A DNA stretch of 32,000 nucleotides from Wallemia ichthyophaga EXF-994 (GCF_000400465.1 NW_008806274.1:690244-722243), one strand, 5' to 3'. Shown: positions 1 through 28,570, counted from the stretch's first letter. Made by a program: numbers and translations. Notes: generated by a model not told the origin, from the letters alone.

Positions 1-164
1 GAGATGAATTCGATGCTGCTGTGCAATGGCCGATGCCAGGCATCGAAAATCTCAGCGAAAGAGAGAAGATAGTGAGAGATGCACTCTACGGGACAGACAG
101 CAGCAACGCGCCAGGACTGGAGATTGTCGAGGAGGCTGAGAGGCAGCTGGAGGAGGAGAAATAG
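1..164 (+). CDS. 3' end of an unidentified protein-coding gene (partial, starts before window)
   Basis: Open frame from nt 3: DEFDAAVQWPMPGIENLSEREKIVRDALYGTDSSNAPGLEIVEEAERQLEEEK, stop TAG at 162-164, followed by AT-rich 3' sequence. Family not recognised. Confidence 0.7.
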   Translation, partial: DEFDAAVQWPMPGIENLSEREKIVRDALYGTDSSNAPGLEIVEEAERQLEEEK

Positions 165-2649: not shown

Positions 2650-3747
2650 ATGTCAGATGACGAGGACTATCAGCAGGCGGCTCTGAAAGCCCTAGAAGCT
2701 CACCAGAAAGCTTTCGAGAATCAGTTCGCTCCTCCTCCCTCCAAGTCTGCGAGGGAAGACCAATCCAGCGACGATAGCCACGATAGCGACAATAGCGATG
2801 ATGGCAAGAGCAGCGACGACAACAACGACAACGACGATGGCAGCATACAGAGTTTCGACAGTGACGACGATATCATCGGCTCGGATACCGCCGCTCAAGT
2901 CGACGATCTGTTTAATGTCGGAAAGCGTAAGTCAGCACTATGCCCACAGTCACACTCACTCACACCTGCCAGTGAAAGGAAAAGGCAAGCAGAAAGAGGA
3001 TAGCGCACCACGCAACGCTCCAAATGAGCCGCAGGTCGTGGTTTTCGGTGAGCAGGCTGGCGCGTCTGCACCTTCCACCCGAGACAGGGACAGCAAGAGG
3101 GCGCAGAAAGCATTCATGGTGAGCGTGTCTGTCTGCACTCTCGAGTACTCCCCCCTGACCCTCCAACGCAGTCTTCGAAGGTTAACAAAGTCCAGCAAGG
3201 TCCTTCCGAAGGCACAAAAAGCAAGCAGCGCAAACCATCTCAAATGAGCGACGCAGATAGATCCAATATAGAGAATGATAAAGAATTAGAACAGCTCCTG
3301 CACTCGCAACTCTTCACTGCGCGTGAAAACACAAAAAACATGAAAGCTGGCGATAAGATGAGGATGTATGAAGGCCGTTTGCTTGAAATAGCAGGTAAAG
3401 CAGATGTCGGACGTGGCGCTGCCAAGTTGAAGAAAGCGGAGCATAAGAAAGCATCTGGTGTCGTGCGTACCGGCTTAGAGAAACATGATAAGGAGATGAA
3501 GGTGAATGAACTCCAGCACGCTAAGGATCTAGGCGTCTACGACAAATCTCTCAAGCATCTCTACGAAGGCGCTGAAGGAAAATCCAAAGCTACGAAACGG
3601 TCTTTCGGTAGTCTCAACGCTGATCGCGATAATAAGAGACAAAAGGGTCTGAGTATGGGTGTTGGTAAATTCAAGAATGGCATGCTGTCTATATCTAAAG
3701 CTGAGATCGATTCCGTCAATTCCCAACCGAAAAGGAGGGGTAAGTAG
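2650..3747 (+). CDS. FAF1: Faf1-like small-subunit processome / 18S rRNA processing factor (3 exons)
   Basis: Introns 2927-2972 and 3119-3171 join three ORF pieces. Acidic N-terminus, EPQVVVF, KAFMSSK, NDKELEQLLHSQL and C-terminal KGLSMGVGKFKNGMLSISKAEID match the fungal Faf1 family as I recall it. Confidence 0.75.
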
Positions 3748-4037
3748 TGTGATATTACGGATTTTTATATTGTATTGACTTATTAATCGTAATTTTTATT
3801 ATAAGGTGTTTCTGGGGCGTTCTGACGGGGATCTTGAGGTGTTTTGAGAAGCGACGATATACATTACGTTGTAACTCAGTATTTATGGAGCGCTATATAG
3901 AGTGAAAAAACAGAGCCATAAGTAGAGATAAATTAGACTCAAATACGTCCCACATATACATTTATCTTTGTTAAATTTGAATTGTTTGATAGACGTTACA
4001 ACAAAACATAGAAGAATCATCGAGCAATAGCCCAACG

Positions 4038-4129
4038 GCACGCATCGGATAGTGGTATTCCGTCACGTTCAGGCTTCTAAGTACATCGTGATGCCTCAGG
4101 CGTCCTGGGTTCGAATCCCAGTGCGTGCA
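4038..4129 (+). tRNA. tRNA with CAG anticodon, most likely tRNA-Leu(CAG), 12-nt intron 4074-4085
   Basis: Acceptor GCACGCA/TGCGTGC (7/7 pairs), A73; D arm GGATAGTGGTATTCC; anticodon stem TCACG/CGTGA with loop TT-CAG-G-[intron]-T; intron A at 4083 can pair with T32 (A-I pair); 13-nt variable region TGCCTCAGGCGTC; T arm CTGGG-TTCGAAT-CCCAG; T-tracts downstream. Confidence 0.88.
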
Positions 4130-4134
4130 AAAAC

Positions 4135-4144
4135 TTTTGTTTTT
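4135..4144 (+). terminator. Pol III terminator (T4-G-T5) of the CAG tRNA gene
   Basis: TTTT at 4135-4138 and TTTTT at 4140-4144, just 3' of the discriminator base. Confidence 0.75.
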
Positions 4145-4691: not shown

Positions 4692-5702
4692 ATGGTTCAA
4701 ACAAGATCTAAGGGTAAATCTGCAGCCAAAAAAAGCAGCTCAGTCAGGACCAGAGCAGTCTCAAGGAAACCAAACGCCTCAATTCCGTCAAAGCGCAATT
4801 GCCCACCCCAATTCAGGCGTTTGGTTGATCCTCAATTCGCAGGCCCATCAACGCCCACGTATAAACAGTCAAATACAAGTGACATGGCACCAGAGGAAAT
4901 TGACATGCTACTTTATGACATAAAGCCGAACTTCGATCACATTCGCAAAACTATGGGTTTAGTGAGTGGTGAAGTAAAATCTTGACTCCTGACTGAACCC
5001 CCATCCCAGCACAAAGCGAACTTCACCCTCAAAGTATTAATGTGAGAGGTTAACATATATCTCGAACATAAATCCTAACACCATCACAGGCTTACCACCA
5101 TTCCTGACTCGGGTATTCGATTCTGTTGCCATGAGAAACACGGTTTCGTAATTTACGACAAGAAGCTAGTGAGAAACCTTAGATGACTTTGAATGTTCTA
5201 ACTTCAACCAGCTCGTCCCGATGCTGGAAATATATGCCCGTCTGAGCTCAAAAATTTCAGCATGCCTAAACTCATTTATGAGAAGTAGTCAGAGTAACTT
5301 CACTGTCAAATGTCAGTGTCCGAACATGGTTGATCAGAATTCTTTGTGCCTAAGTAAACGCATGCTGTTTTACAAGTTCCGCCAACCCTTCAATGGCAAT
5401 TACAATGTAAGATTTTATGGCGCTTTTGCAGGTGTGAGTCAGCTGACATCTAGATTTAGGACTTCTTCGAACAGGACCTAGTAAGAAGTGCTGTTGAGGA
5501 AAGAAATAGCATAAAGCCGGCATCATGGATTTTTAAGGAAGCGTATAAGGACATTGCGAAGAAGCAAGGTTTTGTCTTTGAAATGAAAAGTGAAGACGAG
5601 ACTAGTAGTACTAGCAGCGACGAAATTATTCCAAAGCGTAAGATATCCGCAAACTTTCCAATTGGAACATCGCAGATAATGTTGAAGTTATACAAGGTTT
5701 AG
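4692..5702 (+). CDS. Orphan multi-exon gene; basic N-terminus and a possible divergent HSF-type winged-helix domain
   Basis: ATG 4692 (MVQTRSKGK...). Four canonical introns (4962-5009, 5042-5089, 5169-5211, 5407-5459) keep one frame to TAG 5700-5702. Segment NFTLKVLMLTTIPDSGIRFCCHEKHGFVIYDKKLLVPMLEIY...KRMLFYKFRQ loosely follows the HSF pattern. Extra introns in exon 4 are possible. Confidence 0.6.
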
Positions 5703-6320: not shown

Positions 6321-6394
6321 CTCTCCGAGGTGGGCTCGAACCACCAACCTCCCGATTAACAGTCGGACGCGCTAGCCAATTGCGCCATCGGAGA
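6321..6394 (-). tRNA. tRNA-Asn(GTT), intronless
   Basis: Reverse complement TCTCCGA TG GCGC AATTGGCT AGCGC G TCCGA CT GTT AA TCGGG AGGTT GGTGG TTCGAGC CCACC TCGGAGA G: full cloverleaf, G73, T6 terminator at 6316-6311. Confidence 0.96.
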
Positions 6395-7118: not shown

Positions 7119-7949
7119 ATGGCAAAACTAACTCCTTCATCAACTATCAAGCTGAATAATGGTGCTCAGCATCCCGTTATCGGACTAGGGACATATTTAC
7201 TCAAAGACAGTGCATCTATAGCACAAGCGATAAACACAGGCTACAAGGCACTAGATACGGCCTGCTTTTACCACAATCACAAGGAATTTGGCAAAGGAGT
7301 GCGTGATTCTGGAGTACCACGTGAGAGTCTATACCTCATTTCCAAAGTAGATCCATGGACTGGGACAGTGCGCAATGCACGACAATCTATCCTGCAGTCG
7401 CTACAAGATGCGCAGGTCGGCTATTGGGACCTAGTTTTGGTCCACTCGCCAAGCGGCGGGAAGAGTGTGAGAATGGGTGCGTATCAGGAGCTTTCGACAT
7501 TAGTGGAAGAGGGCAAAATACGCTCATTGGGAGTGTCAAATTATGGAGTTAAACACATCGAGGAGTTGCTCAACTCGAAACCTAAATACACACCGGTGGT
7601 TAATCAGGTAGAGGTCCACACTATGCATTCTAACAGTGAGGTCGTGGAGTGGTGTAAGAAGCAGGGTATCCTCGTACAGGCTTACTGTCCACTAGCGAGA
7701 TGTAGGTCGTTGAAAGATGAGAGGATTGGGAGCGTCGCTGAGAAGCACGGCGCTACGAATGCACAAGTGATGCTGGCGTGGTTGATCGGTAGGGGTTTGG
7801 TGCCCCTGCCAAAATCAGGCAACAAAGAAAGACAACAAGACAATTTACAGAGCTTAAAAGTGGAATTAAGCGATGAGGATAATGCGCTACTAAACGGCTT
7901 AGACATGGAAATGGACGTAGATGGGCAATTTATGATACAAAGTATGTGA
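7119..7949 (+). CDS. Aldo-keto reductase (AKR superfamily, Gcy1/2,5-DKG reductase-like), single exon
   Basis: 276 aa; PVIGLGTY, catalytic tetrad in DTACFY / YLISK / LVLVHSP, GKIRSLGVSNYG, PVVNQVEVH, QAYCPL, PLPKS. Confidence 0.95.
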   Translation: MAKLTPSSTIKLNNGAQHPVIGLGTYLLKDSASIAQAINTGYKALDTACFYHNHKEFGKGVRDSGVPRESLYLISKVDPWTGTVRNARQSILQSLQDAQVGYWDLVLVHSPSGGKSVRMGAYQELSTLVEEGKIRSLGVSNYGVKHIEELLNSKPKYTPVVNQVEVHTMHSNSEVVEWCKKQGILVQAYCPLARCRSLKDERIGSVAEKHGATNAQVMLAWLIGRGLVPLPKSGNKERQQDNLQSLKVELSDEDNALLNGLDMEMDVDGQFMIQSM

Positions 7950-14652: not shown

Positions 14653-17600
14653 ATGGCAAGCGTTGTACCTCAAAGCGGTACAGAGAAGGCAGTTTTAGAT
14701 GCCAACACGGAGCCCGGCAACGCCACAGAATCTAGCAAACCGGAGAATACTGATGATGATATCATTATATCACAGGACTGCAACGCTCCGACTGGCGTCT
14801 CCATTTTACAGCTCTGGAAATACTCGACAAAACTCGAGGCTTTTCTTATCATAATTGGGTTGATCAGCGCTGCTGGTGCCGGCGCCATCCAGCCATCCCT
14901 CGCGATCATGTTTGGAAATTTAGTGGATGTTATGAACGACTTTTATTCTTACGTGCCAACGTATCAGTCAGATCCCACGAACCCCGTCCTTAGATTGGAG
15001 TTTGAGAGTAGAAAAACTACCTTCAAGGATGGCGTGGACTACAACTGCTTAATGCTTCTCGTTATCACTATCTGCATGTTTATAGCCGTCTATGGCTTCT
15101 TTTACATCAGCCAGTATACTTCTGAAACCATCTCTCGTCGACTTCGCCTCTTATATCTTCGCTCAGTCTTGCGTCAGGACATTGCTTTCTTCGATAGGAT
15201 AGGAGCCGGCGAGATAGCCACCAGGATTGAGACGGACATGGCCTTGATCCAGAGCGCCATTTCTGAAAAATCAAACTTGGCAGTTATGTTCCTGTCTAGT
15301 TTCGTAGTGGCTTTCATCATAGCATTCAGTATACAAGCGCGTCTGGCTGGTATCTTATTCATCGTAGTCCCGTGCATTGCGATTGCTATGGTGGTTATTA
15401 TAATTTTCATTACAAAGTATGAAGAGAAAGGTCTCCAGAACATCGCTGATTCAGGTACACTAGCCGAGGAAGTTATTTCTACAATACGCACAGCGAAGGC
15501 TTTCAGTATACAGACTGCATTGGGTTTATTGTATGATGATCATCTCAAGGCAGCTCGCAGAGAAGGGTTCAAGCTGGCCACCGTCACGGCTGTTGGATTC
15601 TCGTCCTTCGATTTCATGGCTTACTCAGCATATGCTCTGGCTTTTGTGGTATTCGCGCATTTACTTCTGAATGGTGGGCTGTCAGACTCGCTATCAGCTC
15701 CTCTAACACAGCTCAATAGGCACGTCCGTCGGCCAATTGATATCAGTAGTTGAGGCAATCATAGTTGGTGCGTTTGGACTAGGCATGGTTGCCCCACAAT
15801 TACAGATCATCGCTAAAGGACAAGCTGCCGCGGCCAAGATCTACGAAACGATTGATAGGGTGCCGTCGATCGACAGTGAATCGGAAGATGGCATCAAACC
15901 TGCGTCTGTGAACGGAAGTATTACATTTCACCATATTAATTTCGCGTATCCTTCACGACCAGGTGTACAAGTGATGAAGGATTTTAACGCTACTTTTCCT
16001 CCGGGACAGTTTACAGCACTTGTTGGTGCGTCTGGAAGTGGAAAAAGTACATCAGTAAACCTCATTGAGCGCTTCTACGATCCCCTTTCCGGCACCGTCA
16101 AGCTCGATGGTCACGATTTAAAGGACCTCAATGTCAAGTGGCTTCGCAGCAAGATCGGTCTGGTTGGCCAGGAGCCTGTTCTTTTCAACGATACCGTACG
16201 CGCTAATGTTGAACATGGCCTGATCGGTACAGATATGGAGTACTTCTCGGATCAACAGCGACTGGAATTGGTTGTTAGAGCCTGTCAAACAGCTAATGCA
16301 GACAACTTTATTCAAACTCTACCCTCCAAGTACAATAACACGGTCGGTGAGCGCGGTATGCTCTTGTCGGGAGGACAAAAGCAGCGACTTGCCATTGCTC
16401 GTGCTATCGTATCAAATCCCCCTATTCTACTGCTGGATGAGGCTACTGCTGCTCTTGATTCGGCTTCTGAATCCATCGTCCAAAAGGCACTCGATCAGGC
16501 TTCCCAGAACCGTACGACGGTGGCCATTGCACACCGTCTCTCGACTATCAAGAATGCGCATCAGATTATCGTGATGGGTAGTGGCAAAATCCTGGAAGTT
16601 GGCAATCACTATTCCCTCACTTCTAATCCGCAAAGTGCATACCTGCAGCTTGTCAACGCTCAGCAACTCGCAGAGAGCACTGAGGATAGTGAAGCAGGGG
16701 TAGCTGAGCATGTAGAGGTGCCTACAAAAGATGAAAATAGGAGTGTTAAATCCAAACAACTTTCGATCGCCTCGGAAATTTTACGCGATGGCGAAAGCGT
16801 CCCTGAGAAGGTAATCAATAAGTACTCATGGACGCACGTCCTCAGTTCCCTTGTTAAGATAAATCGGAGTGCTTGGCCGCTATATGTGATTGGCACATCA
16901 GCTGCGATCTGCAGTGGCGCTGCCTTTCCTTGCTTCGGTATAATATTTGGTAAAACCCTACAAGAGATTAGTGAAAGAACACCTGGCGACCCGGACTATC
17001 AATCCTACATCAAGTCCCATTTAGATCGTGATGCTCTATGGTTCTTTGTAAGTTATATCGAGTGTGTAAACCACCTTCTAACATCCAATCAGGTCATCGC
17101 TCTGGGTGCTGGTGTTGCTCTCGTAATTCAGACTTACTGCATGCAAAGGTCCGGAGAAATGCTCACTTTCATCCTGCGACATGAGTCGTTCAAGAAGCTT
17201 CTGCACATCGATGTTGATTATTTTGATCGTAAAGAAAATAACACGGGTGTGTTGTGTTCTGGTTTAGCAAGTAACGCTAAGTCAGTGAATGGTTTGGCTG
17301 GTATTTCAAGTGGTAGTATTCTTCAATGTCTCGCAACAGTTATAATAGGCGCTGCTGTCGGCATCGGTTACTCATACAAAATTGGGTTGGTGGGCGTAGC
17401 TTGCCTGCCTCTCACATTTGCCGCCGGTCTCACCGAGCTGAAAATAGTCACTCTGAAAGATAAGCATTCAAGAGAGAGCTACGAAGAGTCTTCGAATATG
17501 GCTTGCGAGTCTGCTGGTGCAATAAGAACCGTAGCCGCACTCACAAGAGAGGATCAGATTGTGAGCCACTACGGTAATCTCCTCCTCAAGCCATACAATA

Positions 17601-18673
17601 CGGCAATAAGATCTGCGCTATGGAGAAGCGCCGTTTTTGCACTTGGACAGGCATTGAGTTACGGTTCTATCGCACTTATCTTCTATTGCGGCTCGCTTTG
17701 GCTTATGGACCTCACTCTTGATCTTCAATCATTTTACGTAAGTCTGGAAAGTATAATTTTCGCAGCCATTTTGTCTTCACGTATATTCACGTACGTACCG
17801 GATTTAAGTAGTGCTAGAGGAGGTGCGACTCGCATTCTGAGGCTGTTGAAACATCAAGACAAGATAGAAATTGATAGTGCCAATTATAGCGGCAAGCACC
17901 TCGATACTGTTGAAGGTCACGTCACATTTGATGATGTGCATTTCAGGTATCCAACTCGCCCAGATGTACCGGTCTTACGTTCACTCGATCTGGACATCAA
18001 GCCGGGCAGTTATGTGGCATTGGTGGGGCCTAGTGGATGTGGAAAGAGTACTACCATACAGCTCATCGAGCGCTTTTACGATCCAACATACGGCTCTGTC
18101 AAGCTAGATGGACTAGAATTGCGCGACATCAATCTCAACAATCTCAGATCTCACATGGCACTCGTCTCTCAGGAGCCTACGCTCTACGGAGGCACTGTCA
18201 AATACAATATTGCAATGGGAGCAACCAAACCACATGAGGAGGTCACACAAGAGGAGCTGAAAGAAGCCTGTGCAGATGCCAACATTCTCGACTTTGTACA
18301 AGGTTTGCCGGATGGATTCGAGACGCAGGTCGGTGGTAAAGGTACGCAACTATCGGGAGGTCAAAAGCAGCGTATCGCTATCGCCAGAGCTCTCATACGA
18401 AAACCAAAGATCCTCCTGCTCGACGAGGCTACGAGTGCACTCGACCAGAATAGTGAGGCGGTTGTACAGGCCGCGTTGGATAAGGTGGCGTCGGGTAGGA
18501 CTACGATAGCTATCGCTCATCGTCTCTCAACTATCCAGAAGGCGGATAGGATATACGTCTTCAAGGATGGGATGGTCAGTCAAGCTGGAACCCATAAGGA
18601 GCTGATCGAGGAGAGGGGTGGACTTTATGCAGAGCTCGTCGCTCTTCAAACGCTTTCCAAGCGTAGTGAGTAA
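14653..18673 (+). CDS. Full-length ABCB (MDR/P-glycoprotein-like) transporter, 3 exons
   Basis: TMD-NBD-TMD-NBD. NBD1 GASGSGKS, GQEP, LSGGQKQ, ILLLDEATAALD, IAHR; NBD2 GPSGCGKS, SQEP, LSGGQKQ, ILLLDEATSALD, IAHR. Introns 15674-15719 and 17048-17092 (the second is in frame). Confidence 0.96.
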
Positions 18674-21774: not shown

Positions 21775-24700
21775 TCAAAAGGCTTCTTCATTCTCATCGG
21801 GTTGGCGATACCCTTCTGTTTGTGAGAATACTGTTGGCGTTTCCGCTTCCATTTCCACTTCACCTTCTCCTGCTCCTGCTTCTCCTTCTCCTGGTGCATA
21901 CAGTGACTGAGGCTTCGAACCGAACAGCGTGCTTATCCTGTTCAAACTCTTTTCATCTAGCGATGTTCTACGTTCATTCTGCGCCGATGACATTGATGAT
22001 CTTGATCGCGGTGCAGCAGGCGATGGTGATACAGCAGCTGAGTGTGCTGAGACTAGTTAGTATATCCCTCTCAACCACCCATTAATATCACTCACTCGTT
22101 TTAGGTGGTGCAGGTGAAGTCACACTCGCTCGCTCCTCTTCCTCCATGCTAAGCCTCCGCCACACCCTTTTGATGTACGAGTTGAATACATCCCCTAAAT
22201 CTCCCAGCTGCTTGTCAATACGCGCTTGTTTTTCTGGATGCTCCTTTTGAAACACGTAGAGATCAGTAATCCCTTCCTTGTTCGTCGTTGATTCCGATAT
22301 TTTATCGAATATCTTCCGCAGACGCTCATTCACTCCGTAATCTTCTACAGAAATTTGCGAGTCTCTGAAATTGTTTGCAGTGGACGATACCTGCGGAACG
22401 TTCTTAATACCTAATCCCATACCACCCTCGACTGCACTTGGTGGACCTCTATTGAGCAGTCTGTATAGGTAAGTGTATACAATTGAGTCTTCTGGATTAG
22501 ATACCAGATCTAACTTCTCATACACCTTGTCATCGTACACAGCTTGATTTAAGTCAGCTCGATTAGCACTATGTACCACGAAAATTGCACTCACCAACCA
22601 AACTCTGTATAATAGTCTTGACAGTGCGCAGAGGCATGTCTCCAAGAGCAATCTCGTCACTGGCTCTACTACGCCACTCAGCTGGTGGTATCTTCTGCAA
22701 GAACTGTTCGAGTGTGTAAAGTAACACGCTGGGATCAAGACGAGCAGCCTCCAAGTCATCTTTGACATTTCTTGCCGTCTTCCATACACACTTGAGAACC
22801 AATTCAGGCAGCTTCGCTTCGGCACTCTCGTTGCGCACCTTCAAGTTGTGAAGGTTGATCGTGGCAGCTGACAGAAGATCAAATAGAGCGCTGAATATGG
22901 CTGTGAGATCGCCATGAGTGAATAACCTGAGTAAAAGCATGTTGATGAATCTAGATAAGTCTTTCAGTGAAGAGCTTTCCGCTGTTTGCAATAATCTAGT
23001 CGTCAGCTCCTCCAACAGCAGTCTTATCGAATCACTCGAAAGTGTGGCAGCTATCGTGGGCGAGTCAACCGTTGCATTAAGCGTCTGTATAAGGTGTTTT
23101 GCCAATCTGAAGACGTTCGGCACCATCTCCTCTCTAAGCGTTTCAAACGTGTTAAACATCTGTTCAGACTTCATGTCAGCAATCATTCATTTTCACTCCA
23201 AACACTCACCTGTGTTGTGATATTCGTTACCAATCGGTCAGCTTGCCTGACTAGCTCATCGGATGGACTTTCCAACTTGCGCTGAATAACCTTGAGCGAG
23301 TCGACACTCCTCTCTGGTTCATTTGACAATATCCCGGCGATTGGATCGGCTGGAGGCTGGTTACTTGATTGTATTGACTGTGCAGACTTGTTTGAACTGA
23401 GGGATGTAGGCCTTGATGGTGCTTCCTTCCCCACTTGACCGCTCGAACTAGAACTAGAACTAGGCTGAGGTAATCCAAACGAAGGTTGAGGAAGCGCGGA
23501 TGTTCTACCGAGCTGCGAAGGGGGACGAATACCTCTAGTGCCCGCGCCAATTTTGGATGTAGGGATGCTTTTGCGAGGCGACTCAACTGCTGGGGACTGT
23601 GACCGGTTAACGGTGCGGGAGGAAACTCCAGCTGAGCTCCTTGACTCTGGACGACTTGGGGACTCAGAGCGCAGTGTATTTGGTTGAGATATCCTACTAT
23701 GTGCTGAAGATGGACGTTGGGCAATGCGTGACCCAGGAGCAGGTTTGCCTGTAACAGATGTACCCCTCTCAGGCTGTCTTTTAAGTCTTTCCTCAAGCAT
23801 ACTGAACTCCTTCGGTTGCAGTTCGCCAACCATTGACCAGACTTGCTCGCCAACTATTTTGTAAACTTCTACTAGTGTGTTGAGAACCGAATTCCTCACA
23901 GCACTATCTCTGTCACTGAGACTAGCCCCGATCGTCCTCAGTGCTTTGCCAGAGCTCAGCACACCCATGCCGTGTCTATTGATGATACTCCCAAGCTCGT
24001 CAATGGACTCAGATCTTGCGCGCGAGTTCTTACAAGTCGTACCATGGTCGAGAAGATGACCAAAGACTTTGCTTGGTGGGTACGAACGGCCAAGCAGCTT
24101 GAGAATAGCTCTGATGCGCACTCTGACTGGCTCCTTATTGTCACCCGACTAGACGTATTATTAGTTTTTACCATCTGCATCAAACGCACACACCCACCTT
24201 AATGATCAACGACGGCAAAAAAGCATTGGCTTCGTAGTCCGTAAGTTGAGCATTCACCTCATCCAAAACCCTCAAAGTCAGCTCAATCACCTCCAATGTG
24301 CGCAGTATGATACTCGTGTTGTTATCGAACAATCTCAAAGTAACGTACTTGAGGATGATGTCTACGTTGGCCAAGATATACTGGCGGGACTTGTCGACGC
24401 CCAATCCAAACTTGTCAATGTCACCTAAAGCCTCTTGGACGGCGTCATTGATAACAGCCAGACCAGACAGATAGTCGGACTCGGCGTGGCGATCAGTGCT
24501 AAAGAGCAGGCTATGAAGGCGTGCACTTAAAAATGGTTGGGTTTGATGCTCCATGTAGTCAATCTGCTCCGGTCTGACACCACCTTCTCCACCAAGTGTG
24601 AATCTTGAACTACCATCCTTGACTGCTCTTTGGCGTTTGCTCATCAAGTCCGACGAGTTGAAGGGATAGCTAGTATCTGATGATGGAGTTTGTGCAGATG

Positions 24701-27700
24701 AGGTGCTTGCTATCGACCCGCTAGATGGTTTCTTTGATGGAATCCTGGCCTTCATCCCAGAAGCACTTTCTTCCTCATCATAAGCCGGAGCAGCTGTCGA
24801 TTTCGAAAGTGCACCGAAGCGACTACGCAAACCGGTTGGTCTGGCTATAGGTGTACCAGCTGTCGGTGCATGTGGTGCAGTGAATGTTGGCTTGGCCTTA
24901 ACGGGCGTGCCAGATGCTGGTGGCGGACGAACAGCGCTAGGGACCTTTGGACGACTTGATGCAGGTGCTGGCTCCACCTGTGCTGGTTTAGATGGTGCAG
25001 CCGCTGCAGGTGCTGGCTTAGCGGCTCCTCTCGCACCCTGCAGAATGGGCAAAACAGTGTTTTTAGCAGCCGGTTTCAATTTTTCCGTCTTGCTTTCAAC
25101 AAATCCATATCCTGCACTAGCAATAATGTGCGGGAGGAGAGCCTGTGCGTTCTTCCTTACATCTCCATTTCTATCCTCCAAACTACTGACAATTGGCGAT
25201 GCAAGAGGAGCCAAATCCGTGGAACCAGTCGGCGGAATTTTTTCACCCATAAACAAATTCAGCCACTCTAGCACATTCGAACGAAGCGTTGGGTTGGATG
25301 ATTCAAGAGCAATAGCTAATGAGGAAACGAGTGAATCAACACCCTCGCAAGCAGTAGCCATCGCATCAAGCGTAGCAATAGCGGAGGCTCTAACATTCGC
25401 CTTCTGGTCACTAGCTATACCGGCAACACCTGCTACGAAAGCCTTGACGTACTTTTCAAACGGCTTACCCATAGCGAGAGCGATTTTTTGGATAATGTTA
25501 AGCGCCAAGCCCTGCACGATTTTGTTCTGGTCACCAAGTCTGCCTTTCAGAGCGCCTACTAGGTCGGCGTTCATATTCGGTTGTAGTCTGGAATTCTGCT
25601 TCACTTCCAGAACCGCAAATAAACCTTCGAGTGCCTCTTTACGCGTTTTCCATGCGTCACTCTTAGAGCTTGCTACCGTGCCAGATGGAATCAACTTGTC
25701 GAGATTCTGACGGGGTAAGAGATCATCCATCGCATCCCCCCCAGCAGCTGCTCCATCCTTTGGTGCCCCTCCTGCTGGCGGTTTGGCTGCATCAGCGCAA
25801 GACCTAGAGGGTTCTGGCGGCTCCTGCCCTTCGACTTTGGCGAACTCTGAGTCGATCGTCGTTAGCAGTTGAGGGTTGAGATCGTCCAAGAATCCTCTGA
25901 TATCAGATCCGACGAACAATTTCAACGTAACTAGTGTCTTGGTGGCATTTGTTCTTACCATAGCATTAGCAGACTTTAAACCGGTCTTGAGAAACTCGAT
26001 GAGATCTTTCAAAGCCAAACCAGCGATACCAAACTCGTTGAGCAGCTGCTGAACAAACAACATGGCGTCAGCTTGGGCTTTTGGTGCTTTGATCTTGCTT
26101 ATAGCTTCGTAGCCCTGACTTAAGACAAACTGGTGCGACGTCTTCTCAGAGAAAATAATAAGAGTATCTCCAGCTGGTTTCTTAAGCTTCATATCACCAA
26201 TTTTCTCCACCAACGGACCCACAGCCAAGCTTGCGCAAGCTCTGTTGAAAGATTCTGAAGTATCAGCCAACACGCCGAGCAAGGAAAACTGCTTGGCAGA
26301 TACTTGAAAGTTCTTTTCAGCCCATCCTGGTTTCTTGCTGAGGAATCTGAAGAGCACTTCGCATGATAGCTGTTGGTGGTTCTCCTCATCTATGCACCAT
26401 TTGTGAAGATCTTCTATACCCTGCAATCTTTCCTTCCAGTTGCTGTCACTGAGCTGCGAGACTAGCTTTTCTGGTATGAGCTCAGCAGCTTTGGCTTCTG
26501 CATCTTCAGCTGACATTGACAACTTCGGCTGCTCAGATGGCGCAACACCACCAGTCGACTTGGGTTTGCTGGCACTAGCAGCTGGAGCTGACGCGGGTGC
26601 TGCTTTTGCTGCTGCTGGAGCAGGAGCAGAAGCTACAGCAGGTTTTTTGTTGAGCAGACGCGATGGAGGGGCTCTGGTTGGTGGCTTCACTGGTGAGGGT
26701 GGCTTGGGTGGTTGAGCTGACTCATCGAAACCATTTATGGGATCAGATTGTGGCGTTGGTGGTTTGGCTGGAGCTGCTGCTGGTTTCTGAGATGATCAAT
26801 TAGTGTAAAGCGGCTTCGAAGGACGACCTACTCTGGGTGGTGCAGCTGCGGGCTGTTTAGGTGGTGCAGCCTTAAGAGCTGGCGCTGATACTGCCGCCGC
26901 TTTTGGTTTAAACCCGGGCTTAGCCTTCACTTCAGCCTTCTCGTAGAACTCCATCACCTTCCCCTTACGCTGACCATCGAGACTTTCAACGATGGGGTTC
27001 ATGGCACGCTCGCCGACGATCTTCATGAGCGTACCGAGCGACTCTGCAGACGCTGCACGTACTGGCTCGAAACTGTCCTCCAAGGTAGCTGTACACACGG
27101 CGCCGATGTCCTTCTGCTCGGATTGTGTGGGTGGTGCTTTCGTGCTTTTCAAAGCCCGAACGAGGAACTGTAGTGTACCTTGTTTTACCTGTGGATTCTT
27201 GTGCTTGGCGTAGGTTGTAATGTCATCCATAAAGTCACTAAAGCTAGTGGCGGCGAAGATGGCATCCAAGGCGCCACCAAGCGCATCAGCGACAGTTGCT
27301 TTGCGCTCTTTTAGACGTTCGAAGAGGGGTTTGGAAATGGTGTTTTTGAATCCAGCAAAAGTCGAAGACGGCAGACCCCTTCCGAGCTTCTCTAGCGCCT
27401 GAGCAGCGCCAATAACAACATTAATGTTAAGCTCTGATATGCGCCTTGCTAAGGCGTTGATGAGGTCAGAGTAGTCGGATGAGGCTTCAATTTTGGGTGC
27501 CTTGTTGAGAGTTTCTAGGAGCTGATCAATCACTTCTTTCCTCTCCTGCCACTTCTTGCTTTCGATTAAGGTATAAAATTCTGGGTTGAGTGTCTTGATC
27601 AAGTCGACTGGCGGAATATCTTCATTTGGATCGAAGCCTAAATCCATAGCGCCGTCATCTTGGTTTGATTCAGCGACACCTTCTTCTTCACCGCCAGCTT

Positions 27701-28570
27701 GAGCAGCCTCAGCTTCAGCTTGAGCTTGCCTGGTAAGCCGCGATGCTTTGCCAGATCCTGCACCCTTTCCGTCGCTTTCAAGGTTCTCGAAGCTCTCCTT
27801 GAGTTCTTTAACCTGAACAGGCTTAAGTTCTTCTAGTAGCGGGAATAGAGATTGTCCTAGATAGGTATAAATTGATTGAGCGAGCAGCGTACCTTCAGAT
27901 CTGACGTTTTTATCTGAATGAGCGAATATTCTGGTCAGTGATTTGAGGAGTGGCTTGGTGTTTGTGATTGGCTTGAAGCCAAATTGCGACACCAACTCCT
28001 TCAGCGCGGTGACACAAGTTGCGACCAGCTTTGGCTGTTTAGCAGCGAGTGAGTCGATGACGTTTGCGATGACCGTATCTGCTGTGCCATCCACCTCAAC
28101 AAAGGACAAACACAACTCGATTGCCTTAACTTTGGTCGCTGGTCTCGATGCATTGAACGCCTTTTCAATCGTTGGCTTGCACAGCTCGCCTGAAAGACTC
28201 GCTGCATTCTGGCCAGATTGCTTGAGCAACTCAGTCAACGCCTCGATACCCTTGTCTTGGGCGGCAGCGTTGGAGTCTGTGACAAATTTACTTAGTGTGT
28301 CTGGGCTGCTGAGCCATGGCTTCAACACTGGATCGTCATCTGAAGCGCTCTTCTTGAATTGGTCGATGAGTTCCGCGTAGGCGCTCAATCTGGCTTTCCA
28401 GGACTACTGAGCATGTCAATGGGTGTCTACACGGCTGTATTTTTCCCCACCGCATGTTTAACGCGTTCCGTCAGCGCTATTTGGCTGAAATCTTCTTCCG
28501 GCGGCGGCTGGCCGTCCCTGAAGATAAATAAGTCTGGAGATCTCCGTGCATTACTAGTAATCTCCTACAT
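21775..28570 (-). CDS. STU2: XMAP215/Dis1-family microtubule polymerase (Stu2/Alp14/CKAP5-like), long multi-TOG form, 8 exons
   Basis: TOG motifs SWKARLSAY, KKWQERKE, SNWKERLQG and DAWKTRKEALE, plus C-terminal ALGDMPLRTVKTIIQSL. Introns 28568-28518, 28450-28404, 26831-26787, 24197-24149, 23209-23169, 22594-22543 and 22095-22053. The extreme 3' end is slightly uncertain. Confidence 0.93.

What the first reader, a model, noticed from the sequence alone, without database searches (positions are those of the whole stretch)
4038..4129. Chimeric-looking CAG tRNA: class-II variable arm on a class-I-like D arm
Seen: all stems pair perfectly and a Pol III terminator follows, so it looks functional. 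However, the D arm is GGAT-AGTGGTA-TTCC (U13-U22, minimal loop, C9, G11:C24), not the GCCGAG.GGT..AAGGC arm typical of eukaryotic Leu/Ser tRNAs. The acceptor (GCA..., A73) and D arm resemble Gly/Pro/Val-type tRNAs, while the 13-nt GC-rich variable arm (GCC-TCA-GGC) is class II. Established: yeast LeuRS uses A73, A35 and G37 (all present), SerRS reads the variable arm, and CUG is the codon repeatedly reassigned in yeasts. Seen: CTG encodes conserved Leu here (Walker B 16430-16435, MOB1 NMLYG 10671), so CUG is mainly Leu. Inference: this may be a tRNA recruited from another family to replace a lost tRNA-Leu(CAG), or one that is charged ambiguously.
Basis: partly seen in the sequence, partly recalled or inferred. 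Interest (0 to 1): 0.7.

Follow-up and report, generated by a model that had tools for sequence, protein, structure and literature searches.

The report
Odd-cored leucine tRNA(CAG) of Wallemia
This is a real, conserved, intron-containing tRNA gene for the leucine codon CUG in the salt-loving fungus Wallemia ichthyophaga, and its D arm is built unlike that of any other long-armed leucine or serine tRNA I could compare; CUG still reads as leucine, so it is a structural oddity, not a change in the genetic code.

Summary
Window 4038-4129 (+) is a tRNA gene (Rfam 45.6 bits). It has anticodon CAG, a 12-nt intron at 4074-4085, a 13-nt variable arm, A73 and a T-run terminator. Its D arm is not class II: C9, U13-U22 and a 7-nt loop.

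The window is Wallemia ichthyophaga EXF-994. The 92-nt gene is identical in four more W. ichthyophaga assemblies. The mature sequence is identical in W. mellicola, where only the intron differs. W. hederae has compensatory acceptor-stem changes. An uncultured Wallemia-like lineage has a strongly diverged, intron-less form. Across these, 100% of cells pair and 9 of 24 pairs change on both sides.

About 120 metagenomic tRNA-Leu(CAG) genes all have the canonical D arm. Position 9 is a purine in 140 of 144 class II tRNAs, and position 13 in 143 of 143.

CTG codons in two window genes sit at conserved Leu or hydrophobic columns (15 L of 26, no S or A). A Leu covariance model beats a Ser model by 3-7 bits, but scores fall far below canonical Leu.

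Best reading: a functional tRNA-Leu(CAG) with a remodelled core, probably diverged from a canonical Leu tRNA and not spliced from two families. I could not test whether a canonical copy coexists, nor how the tRNA is charged.

The parts
4038..4129 (+). Whole tRNA(CAG) gene: 80-nt mature sequence plus a 12-nt intron
   Evidence: Rfam RF00005 at 45.6 bits. ARAGORN with the intron option calls Leu(cag). Identical over 92 nt in four other W. ichthyophaga assemblies.
4016..4037 (+). Conserved 5' leader ATCATCGAGCAATAGCCCAACG. The GCAATAG core is also present upstream of the W. mellicola copy.
   Evidence: Read. It is nearly identical in W. hederae and L005, and GCAATAG lies at -16..-10 in W. mellicola. 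A role as a Pol III start-site element is inferred.
4038..4044 (+). Acceptor stem, 5' strand GCACGCA. It pairs with 4122-4128.
   Evidence: Pairs 4:69 and 5:68 change on both sides, and 6:67 changes on one side, among lineages.
4045..4062 (+). U8, C9, the atypical D arm GGAT-AGTGGTA-TTCC (U13-U22, 7-nt loop, no 20a/20b, no 11-CCG-13 motif) and G26
   Evidence: Read. All three countable D-stem pairs change on both sides in L006. C9, pyrimidine 13 and the 9-nt 13..22 segment fall outside the range of 144 class II tRNAs.
4063..4073 (+). Anticodon stem, 5' strand TCACG, and loop U32 U33 C34 A35 G36 G37. The anticodon CAG is at 4070-4072.
   Evidence: Three of the five anticodon-stem pairs covary.
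4074..4085 (+). Intron CTTCTAAGTACA at the canonical 37/38 position
   Evidence: Its sequence and length differ in W. hederae (12 nt) and W. mellicola (17 nt), and it is absent in L006. The exons are conserved throughout.
4086..4091 (+). U38 and the anticodon stem, 3' strand CGTGA
4092..4104 (+). Long variable arm TGCCTCAGGCGTC: U.G plus GCC/GGC stem, TCA loop, 2 nt spacer
   Evidence: The L006 homologue has U:A plus GGC/GCC with a GATT loop, so the stem is kept through changed pairs.
4105..4121 (+). T arm CTGGG-TTCGAAT-CCCAG, with a perfect B box GGTTCGAATCC
   Evidence: Invariant in all lineages.
4122..4129 (+). Acceptor stem, 3' strand TGCGTGC, and discriminator A73 (4129)
   Evidence: A73 is found in 112 of 114 harvested Leu tRNAs and G73 in 29 of 30 Ser tRNAs.
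4135..4144 (+). T runs TTTT G TTTTT, a likely Pol III terminator
   Evidence: Read. All homologues have a run of at least 5 T within about 20 nt of the 3' end.

Best explanation
Window 4038-4129 is a functional nuclear gene for a tRNA-Leu(CAG) of Wallemia ichthyophaga.

Proposed pathway (inferred):
- RNA polymerase III transcribes it, using a perfect B box, a degenerate A box and a T-run terminator.
- The 12-nt intron between positions 37 and 38 is spliced out.
- LeuRS charges the 80-nt tRNA with leucine, using A73, G37 (probably methylated to m1G), A35 and the long variable arm.
- The tRNA reads CUG codons, which make up about 15 per 1000 codons in this window and mean Leu.

The unusual part is the tertiary core. 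It has C9 where class II tRNAs have a purine. It has a pyrimidine at position 13, which stacks or pairs with 22, where they have G13.A22. The D loop is 7-8 nt without the 20a/20b bulge, and the 11-CCG-13 motif is missing, so no ac4C12 is expected.

I infer that this core arose in the Wallemia lineage by divergence from a canonical class II tRNA-Leu and has since been held by strong purifying selection.

Shown: the gene's anatomy, its conservation, its covariation, the Leu meaning of CUG, and the non-canonical D arm. Inferred: transcription, splicing, leucylation and the evolutionary route.
For: - Organism: a window protein is encoded exactly in GCA_000400465.1, which is W. ichthyophaga EXF-994 (PMC4987115).
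- It is a tRNA: Rfam 45.6 bits.
- Conservation: the 92-nt gene is identical in four more W. ichthyophaga assemblies. The mature sequence is identical in W. mellicola, with a different 17-nt intron. W. hederae and L005 differ by G5:C68 to A5:U68 and C6:G67 to U6:G67. An uncultured relative, L006, scores 48.3 bits.
- Covariation: 116 of 116 cells pair, and 9 of 24 pairs change on both sides. None of 500 shuffles reaches this, and slid controls give 0-1.
- CUG means Leu: at conserved columns of XMAP215/Stu2, CTG aligns to 6 L, 2 V and 1 I out of 14. In the ABC transporter it aligns to 9 L, 1 V, 1 F and 1 I out of 12. No Ser or Ala appears.
- Leu marks: A73 and G37 are present. The literature lists methylated G37, the extended variable loop and A73 as elements for leucylation, and G73 and A37 as Ser-side elements (PMC6041473). 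A73 is conserved in all tRNA-Leu, and G37U is lethal in yeast tRNA-Leu(UAG) (PMC3488233).
- Model scores: a CM built from non-CAG eukaryotic Leu tRNAs beats a Ser CM, 56.2 vs 48.9 for L006 and 43.3 vs 39.2 for the window. A profile HMM of non-CAG Leu is the best isotype for all three forms.
- Divergence route: the L006 D arm has canonical class II length.
Against: - The Leu-model scores are far below canonical Leu(CAG) genes. Those score 81-96 bits without an intron and 64-66 bits with one. The window's 43 bits lies inside the range that class I tRNAs reach on the same model, 22-47 bits.
- The Leu-over-Ser margin is only 3-7 bits.
- The A box departs from the consensus at two positions.
- I have no expression, splicing or charging data.
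- I could not list the other tRNA genes of any Wallemia genome. A canonical tRNA-Leu(CAG) may coexist, and the other Leu and Ser tRNAs may or may not share this core.
- The 5' third has no clear Leu ancestry in the W. ichthyophaga form.
- A W. sebi-complex contig, L131, lacks the gene at the syntenic site.
Confidence: 0.68

Rival explanations
1. It is a divergent isodecoder that coexists with a canonical tRNA-Leu(CAG), or with a wobbling tRNA-Leu(UAG), elsewhere in the genome. On this reading it is functional and conserved but is not the main CUG decoder, and it may have a specialised or regulatory role.
For: I could not scan the rest of the genome. S. cerevisiae reads all CUN codons with tRNA-Leu(UAG) alone (PMC3488233), so a CAG tRNA can be dispensable. 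A W. sebi-complex contig lacks the gene at the syntenic site.
Against: The mature sequence is identical in W. ichthyophaga and W. mellicola, which implies strong constraint of the kind expected for an essential decoder. CTG is a common codon here, at 15 per 1000. The gene's absence from one site does not show absence from that genome.
Confidence: 0.22
2. It has a chimeric or recruited origin. Either a class I tRNA (His, Thr, Val or Ala-like 5' part) recombined with a Leu 3' part, or a class I tRNA gained a variable-arm insertion and a CAG anticodon. Either way it would have replaced a lost canonical tRNA-Leu(CAG).
For: The 5' 26 nt of the W. ichthyophaga form do not align to the Leu profile, whose alignment starts at position 30. 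The nearest matches to the D arm are class I tRNAs. C9 is otherwise seen almost only in tRNA-His. tRNA-Leu(CAG) was lost at least seven times in budding yeasts (PMC5951914).
Against: No donor stands out; the best scores are 8-12 of 25. The L006 form has a D arm of canonical class II length and aligns to the Leu profile from position 13. The anticodon arm ACG-TTCAGGT-CGT, the layout of the variable arm and the T loop match canonical Leu(CAG) genes. The D stem evolves fast within the lineage, with all three countable pairs replaced, so similarity to any donor would be erased either way.
Confidence: 0.13
3. It is charged ambiguously or non-cognately. The rebuilt core would re-orient the variable arm so that SerRS or another synthetase also charges the tRNA, giving low-level mistranslation at CUG, as in Candida.
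For: SerRS relies mainly on the long variable arm (PMC6041473). The core that orients that arm is changed here. The Ser CM scores only 3-7 bits below the Leu CM. The L006 form has C33, which recalls the non-U33 of Candida tRNA-Ser(CAG); that comparison rests on my own knowledge.
Against: A73 and G37 are on the Leu side, while G73 and A37 are on the Ser side. Harvested Ser tRNAs have G73 in 29 of 30 cases. CTG never aligns to a conserved Ser or Ala column in the 26 informative columns.
Confidence: 0.07
4. It is a pseudogene or a tRNA-derived repeat with no function as a tRNA.
For: The Rfam score is low next to the neighbouring tRNA-Asn, 45.6 vs 63.4 bits. The A box is degenerate. The 13-22 position is a mismatch.
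Against: All stems are intact. Nine pairs covary. The exons are invariant while the introns diverge. T-run terminators are kept. There is one copy per locus and no repeat family.
Confidence: 0.02

Closest known systems
Canonical eukaryotic cytosolic tRNA-Leu(CAG) (class II)
   Same: CAG anticodon; U33; G37; A73; a long variable arm of 13 nt with a 3-4 bp stem; T loop GGTTCGAATCC; a 7/5 acceptor/T architecture; an intron at 37/38 as in many fungal copies; anticodon arm ACG-TTCAGGT-CGT, as in many metagenomic copies.
   Different: C9 instead of G9. U13-U22 (or C13:G22 in L006) instead of G13.A22. A D loop of 7-8 nt with the 13..22 segment at 9-10 nt against 10-14 nt. No 11-CCG-13 motif. It scores 25-50 bits lower on a Leu covariance model.
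Candida (CTG-clade) tRNA-Ser(CAG) and Ascoidea/Saccharomycopsis tRNA(CAG) genes
   Same: Unusual CAG-anticodon class II tRNAs in fungi, with G37. One lineage here has a non-U33 (C33 in L006).
   Different: Those tRNAs have G73 and a canonical Ser body, and they change the meaning of CUG (PMC5951914; PMC6041473). Here the discriminator is A73, CUG remains Leu, and the oddity is in the D arm.
Type I (short variable arm) tRNA-Leu of Streptomyces coelicolor and of animal mitochondria
   Same: These are precedents for a LeuRS accepting a tRNA-Leu whose architecture departs from the class II norm (PMC6614811 abstract).
   Different: Those tRNAs lack the long variable arm. The Wallemia tRNA keeps that arm and changes the D arm. 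It is also eukaryotic and cytosolic.
Nematode nev-tRNAs and bacterial allo-tRNAs
   Same: Non-standard tRNAs with long variable arms, found by genome scanning (mentioned in PMC6041473).
   Different: Those carry anticodons that do not match their identity, or have 8/4 or 9/3 architectures. Here the anticodon matches the likely identity and the architecture is 7/5.
Eukaryotic tRNA-His
   Same: U8-C9, a 4-position D stem ending in U13, and a D loop AGUGGU(U)A. Three of the four class I tRNAs with C9 in my harvest are His.
   Different: The anticodon is CAG, not GUG. There is a long variable arm. The acceptor stem is different. The resemblance is limited to about 12 nt, most of which is the A-box consensus.

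Membership tests
tRNA (Rfam RF00005) | Cloverleaf scoring above the family's gathering threshold (29 bits) | tested here: met
   45.6 bits for the window, 44.4-48.3 bits for the homologues.
tRNA (Rfam RF00005) | Stems maintained by compensatory change among homologues | tested here: met
   100% of cells paired. Nine pairs change on both sides, and 0 of 500 shuffles reach this.
Eukaryotic cytosolic tRNA-Leu | Discriminator A73 | tested here: met
   A at 4129, and A73 in all homologues. A73 in 112 of 114 harvested Leu tRNAs. PMC3488233.
Eukaryotic cytosolic tRNA-Leu | G37 (m1G37) and A35 in the anticodon loop | tested here: met
   The loop is UUCAGG|U. The bases are present, but the methylation cannot be tested here.
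Eukaryotic cytosolic tRNA-Leu | Long variable arm | tested here: met
   13 nt, with the stem kept through changed pairs in L006.
Eukaryotic cytosolic tRNA-Leu | Class II D arm: G9, 3-bp stem, G13.A22, 8-11-nt loop with 20a/20b, 11-CCG-13 motif | tested here: not met
   C9, G11-A12-U13, U13-U22, 7-nt loop. This lies outside the range of 144 class II tRNAs. The CCG motif requirement is from PMC11109946.
Eukaryotic cytosolic tRNA-Leu | Top score on a Leu-specific model, at the canonical level | tested here: inconclusive
   Leu CM beats Ser CM by 2.7-7.3 bits, but the scores are 25-50 bits below canonical Leu(CAG) genes. The models are home-made from metagenomic tRNAs. tRNAscan-SE isotype models were not available.
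Eukaryotic cytosolic tRNA-Leu | Charged with leucine by LeuRS | not testable with these tools
   This needs aminoacylation assays or tRNA mass spectrometry.
Eukaryotic cytosolic tRNA-Leu | Its codon is translated as Leu | tested here: met
   CTG aligns to conserved L, V, I or F columns and never to S or A, in 26 informative columns.
tRNA-Ser (including CTG-clade tRNA-Ser(CAG)) | Discriminator G73; A37 (or the Ser body with G73 in the CAG form) | tested here: not met
   A73 and G37 here. G73 in 29 of 30 harvested Ser tRNAs.
tRNA-Ala (including Pachysolen-type tRNA-Ala(CAG)) | G3:U70 pair | tested here: not met
   The pair is A3:U70 in all forms.
tRNA-Sec / allo-tRNA | 9/4 or 8/5 (8/4, 9/3) acceptor/T architecture with a long D stem | tested here: not met
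   7-bp acceptor and 5-bp T stem. A fifth D-stem pair, C9:G26, is possible but unproven.

The most novel reading that the evidence does not exclude
The tertiary core of the CUG decoder has been rebuilt in the Wallemia lineage under a pressure aimed at this one tRNA. On this reading the canonical tRNA-Leu(CAG) is gone from these genomes.

One candidate pressure is escape from a tRNA-targeting toxin, of the kind proposed to have destabilised tRNA-Leu(CAG) in budding yeasts. Another is a changed relation with LeuRS and SerRS.

The sister form with C33 and about 20 substitutions would then mark an ongoing shift in how CUG is decoded, possibly with a low level of ambiguity.
Probability: 0.07. Interest if true: 0.8.

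Novelty: new variant of a known kind. Interest (0 to 1): 0.45.

Why it matters
Class II tRNAs (Leu, Ser) are thought to need a particular D-arm core (G9, G13.A22, extra D-loop bases) to position the long variable arm. That core also carries the CCG motif for ac4C12.

A eukaryotic cytosolic tRNA-Leu that keeps the long arm, drops that core and stays under strong selection would be a natural experiment. It would show what LeuRS, SerRS, the acetylation enzymes Kre33/Tan1, the splicing endonuclease and the ribosome really require.

It concerns CUG, the sense codon most often reassigned in fungi, so it also bears on why this tRNA is evolutionarily unstable.

In practice, annotation tools handle the gene badly. 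ARAGORN misses it without the intron option and calls the W. mellicola copy Met(cat).

If Wallemia's other Leu and Ser tRNAs share this core, or a canonical CAG copy coexists, the finding becomes a lineage quirk of modest interest.

Tried and rejected
- ARAGORN with default settings misses the gene. Rfam and ARAGORN with the intron option were needed.
- Rfam at the gathering threshold over many sources missed the L006 copy. It appeared at 48.3 bits when the search was narrower.
- A metagenome pattern scan meant to catch Wallemia-type relatives returned only canonical Leu(CAG) genes and one intron-bearing tRNA-Gly false positive. I reused the hits as a comparison set.
- The first protein search, with the ORF next to the tRNA, found only three short contigs. 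The G-patch neighbour worked better.
- L130, L131 and L133 hold no tRNA. The contig ends too early, or the locus is rearranged.
- I looked for a class I donor of the 5' third and found no convincing match.
- The isotype HMM for Leu(CAG) failed to build (empty alignment), so that row is void.
- MAFFT put the variable arms out of register. I used a CM-guided alignment instead.
- Three literature searches found nothing on Wallemia tRNAs.
- I rejected Ala identity (no G3:U70), Sec or allo-tRNA architecture (7/5, not 9/4), and the idea that the extra arm is a second intron (it is conserved and covaries).

Full report
WHAT IS THERE

Rfam's tRNA model matches window 4038-4129 on the + strand at 45.6 bits (E = 8e-7). 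The match covers the full model, with a 15-nt insert in the anticodon loop and a long variable region. ARAGORN missed the gene in default mode. With introns allowed it called tRNA-Leu(cag).

Read directly from the sequence:
- Acceptor stem GCACGCA/TGCGTGC; U8 C9.
- D stem GGAU/UUCC, with U13 opposite U22; D loop AGUGGUA (7 nt); G26.
- Anticodon stem UCACG/CGUGA; loop U32 U33 C34 A35 G36 G37.
- A 12-nt intron at 4074-4085, at the canonical 37/38 site, followed by U38.
- A 13-nt variable region UGCCUCAGGCGUC; T arm CUGGG-UUCGAAU-CCCAG; A73.
- T runs at 4135-4144.

WHERE IT COMES FROM

The aldo-keto reductase encoded at 7119-7949 is found exactly in NCBI assembly GCA_000400465.1, scaffold KE007224.1. 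That assembly is Wallemia ichthyophaga EXF-994 (PMC4987115).

The gene lies between a lysine-rich gene (2650-3747, +) and another gene that starts near 4692. A canonical tRNA-Asn(GUU) lies at 6321-6394 on the - strand (63.4 bits).

IS THE D ARM REALLY ABNORMAL?

I scanned the metagenome collection for AGTGGT-N11-13-TYCAGG-N18-48-GGGTTCGAATCCC. The roughly 120 hits are tRNA-Leu(CAG) genes, apart from one intron-bearing tRNA-Gly false positive. All have the class II D arm, mostly UGGCCGAGUGGU(C)UAAGGCG, and they include intron-bearing, fungal-looking copies. None resembles the Wallemia gene.

From those contigs I harvested 144 distinct class II and 206 class I tRNAs:
- Position 9 is a purine in 140 of 144 class II tRNAs. 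C9 occurs in 4 of 206 class I tRNAs, and three of those are tRNA-His.
- Position 13 is a purine in 143 of 143 class II tRNAs.
- The 13..22 segment is 10-14 nt, against 9 nt in the window gene.

The 11-CCG-13 motif is also absent. Kre33/Tan1 need that motif to make ac4C12 in eukaryotic Leu and Ser tRNAs (PMC11109946).

IS IT A LIVE GENE?

I fetched syntenic loci through the neighbouring proteins.
- The whole 92-nt gene, intron included, is identical in four further W. ichthyophaga assemblies.
- W. mellicola (GCA_004918725.1, L128 389-293) has an identical mature sequence but a different, 17-nt intron. The flanking genes are only about 68-73% identical at the DNA level.
- W. hederae (L129 8402-8311) and a metagenomic contig (L005) differ by G5:C68 to A5:U68 and C6:G67 to U6:G67. 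Their 12-nt introns have a different sequence.
- An uncultured lineage (L006, the same organism as L133) is about as distant from W. ichthyophaga as W. mellicola is. It carries a strongly diverged, intron-less copy on the opposite strand next to the same neighbour gene: GCAAGCA UC CACC AGUGGUUA GGUG G CCAGA UCCAGGU UCUGG UGGCGAUUGCCAUC CUGGG UUCGAAU CCCAG UGCUUGC A. It scores 48.3 bits.

I aligned the five distinct rows with a covariance model. All 116 cells form standard pairs, and 9 of 24 pairs change on both sides: 2 in the acceptor stem, 3 of 3 in the D stem, 3 of 5 in the anticodon stem and 1 in the variable stem. None of 500 shuffles reaches this, and slid controls give 0-1. The introns diverge freely while the exons are held. 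T runs follow every copy. A pseudogene or repeat is effectively excluded.

WHAT DOES CUG MEAN HERE?

CTG is a common codon in the window's ORFs, at 15 per 1000.
- In alignments of the XMAP215/Stu2 ORFs with about 110 fungal homologues, CTG falls at conserved columns that are L (6), V (2) or I (1) out of 14. CTT and CTC behave the same way.
- In the ABC transporter, aligned with 80 representatives, the count is L (9), V, F and I (1 each) out of 12.
- No conserved Ser or Ala column is encoded by CTG.

CUG is therefore Leu. A few percent of ambiguity would not be visible in this test.

WHICH IDENTITY?

A73, A35, G37 and the long variable arm are the features listed as important for leucylation. 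G73 and A37 mark Ser tRNAs (PMC6041473; PMC3488233). In my harvest Leu tRNAs have A73 in 112 of 114 cases and Ser tRNAs have G73 in 29 of 30. There is no G3:U70, so Ala is out.

As a stand-in for tRNAscan-SE isotype models, I built two covariance models. One used 19 eukaryote-type non-CAG Leu tRNAs and the other 25 Ser tRNAs.

| Sequence | Leu model (bits) | Ser model (bits) |
|---|---|---|
| L006 | 56.2 | 48.9 |
| Window | 43.3 | 39.2 |
| W. mellicola | 42.9 | 38.7 |
| W. hederae / L005 | 40.0 | 37.3 |

Calibration on other tRNAs:

| Comparison set | Leu model (bits) | Ser model (bits) |
|---|---|---|
| Canonical Leu(CAG), no intron | 81-96 | 63-77 |
| Canonical Leu(CAG), with intron | 64.5-66.2 | 60-66 |
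| Ser tRNAs | 60-81 | 95-103 |
| Class I tRNAs | 22-47 | 29-53 |

Leu is therefore preferred, but weakly. The Wallemia tRNAs are far from the canonical Leu consensus. Profile HMMs built per isotype agree. Non-CAG Leu is the best isotype for all three forms. It aligns to the W. ichthyophaga form only from position 30 onward, but to L006 from position 13.

CHIMERA OR DIVERGENCE?

No class I isotype is a convincing donor for the 5' third. The best scores are 8-12 of 25 and are spread over Thr, Val, Ala and His. C9 together with AU-AGUGGU recalls tRNA-His, but the shared stretch is mostly A-box consensus.

Three points argue against a splice of two families:
- The anticodon arm (ACG-UUCAGGU-CGU), the layout of the variable arm (U + stem + 3-4-nt loop + 1-2 nt) and the T loop match canonical Leu(CAG) genes.
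- The L006 D arm has exactly the length of the canonical fungal class II D arm (19 nt for positions 8-26, loop AGUGGUUA). It differs mainly in having C9 and a Watson-Crick 13:22 pair.
- The D stem turns over quickly within the lineage, so similarity to any ancestor is eroded.

I therefore favour stepwise remodelling of a canonical tRNA-Leu(CAG) in the Wallemia stem lineage, at roughly 60:15 against recruitment.

HOW IT MOST LIKELY WORKS

This section is inference, except where marked above as shown.
- Pol III transcribes the gene from the internal B box (perfect) and A box (two mismatches).
- The intron is removed at 37/38, and G37 is methylated.
- LeuRS charges the tRNA using A73, the anticodon loop and the extra arm.
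- The tRNA reads CUG.
- The core that usually orients the extra arm (G9, G13.A22, 20a/20b) is replaced by a compact D arm. C9 and G26 are conserved in both forms and could pair, as in the minimum-free-energy fold of L006.
- ac4C12 cannot be made.

WHAT REMAINS OPEN

- None of the tools reaches a fungal genome by DNA. I could not establish whether Wallemia genomes also hold a canonical tRNA-Leu(CAG), nor what the D arms of their other Leu and Ser tRNAs look like. I also could not check whether non-Wallemia basidiomycetes share this arm; the metagenomic comparison set is of unknown taxonomy.
- A W. sebi-complex contig (L131, 91% identical to W. mellicola) lacks the gene at the syntenic site because the locus is rearranged there.
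- The L006 form has C33 in place of the near-universal U33. It has about 20 substitutions, although W. ichthyophaga and W. mellicola are identical to each other. Whether it is an orthologue after a burst of change or a paralogue is unexplained, and it rests on one 1.1-kb contig.

VERDICT

This is a real, conserved, almost certainly functional tRNA-Leu(CAG) with a class II variable arm on a non-class-II D arm. It is a new structural variant of a known kind, specific (as far as I can see) to Wallemia.

Three full-text searches found no description of it.

Interest is moderate, 0.45. It is a useful natural test of what the class II core is for, on the codon with the most eventful history in fungi, but there is no sign of a code change.

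Noticed in passing
window 6321-6394 (-): A canonical tRNA-Asn(GUU) gene (Rfam 63.4 bits) lies 2.2 kb from the odd tRNA. In W. hederae it differs by one compensatory pair, C28:G42 to U28:A42. Other Wallemia tRNAs therefore look ordinary.
   Followed up: partly
L006 973-892 (-), ENA ERZ27248930 k119_25521: The uncultured Wallemia-like homologue has C33 instead of U33 (loop UCCAGGU). It has no intron, lies in the opposite orientation, and has about 20 substitutions. Only one short contig supports it.
   Followed up: partly
L128 10969-10870 (-) and L129 19393-19290 (-): tRNA-Met(CAU) genes with long introns (28-34 nt) in W. mellicola and W. hederae. ARAGORN labels one of them Cys(gca). It also labels the W. 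mellicola copy of the CAG tRNA as Met(cat). Intron-bearing Wallemia tRNAs are easily mis-annotated.
   Followed up: no
window 4016-4037 (+); L129 8424-8403 (-); L128 about 405-399 (-): A conserved 5' leader sits just upstream of the tRNA: ATCATCGAGCAATAGCYCAACG in W. ichthyophaga and W. hederae, with a GCAATAG core also in W. mellicola. It may be a Pol III start-site element.
   Followed up: no
L131 1-1120 versus L128 1-505: A W. sebi-complex metagenomic contig is 91% identical to W. mellicola but loses collinearity exactly where the tRNA lies, and it has no tRNA there. The locus is a rearrangement breakpoint.
   Followed up: partly
window 24180-28388 (-): A long XMAP215/Stu2/Alp14-type gene with several TOG domains. 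Its best named relatives are only about 45% identical (Phlebia, Hermanssonia, Glomeromycota, many Ascomycota). No Wallemia protein was listed for this query.
   Followed up: no
window 14653-18673 (+): A full-size ABC transporter (two ABC_membrane plus ABC_tran halves; 1309 aa in the NCBI gene model). I used it for the CTG codon test.
   Followed up: partly
L001 10881-11074 (-): With the intron option, ARAGORN reports a 194-nt 'tRNA-Leu(cag)' inside a coding region of a related metagenomic contig. Rfam finds nothing there, so it is a false positive.
   Followed up: partly
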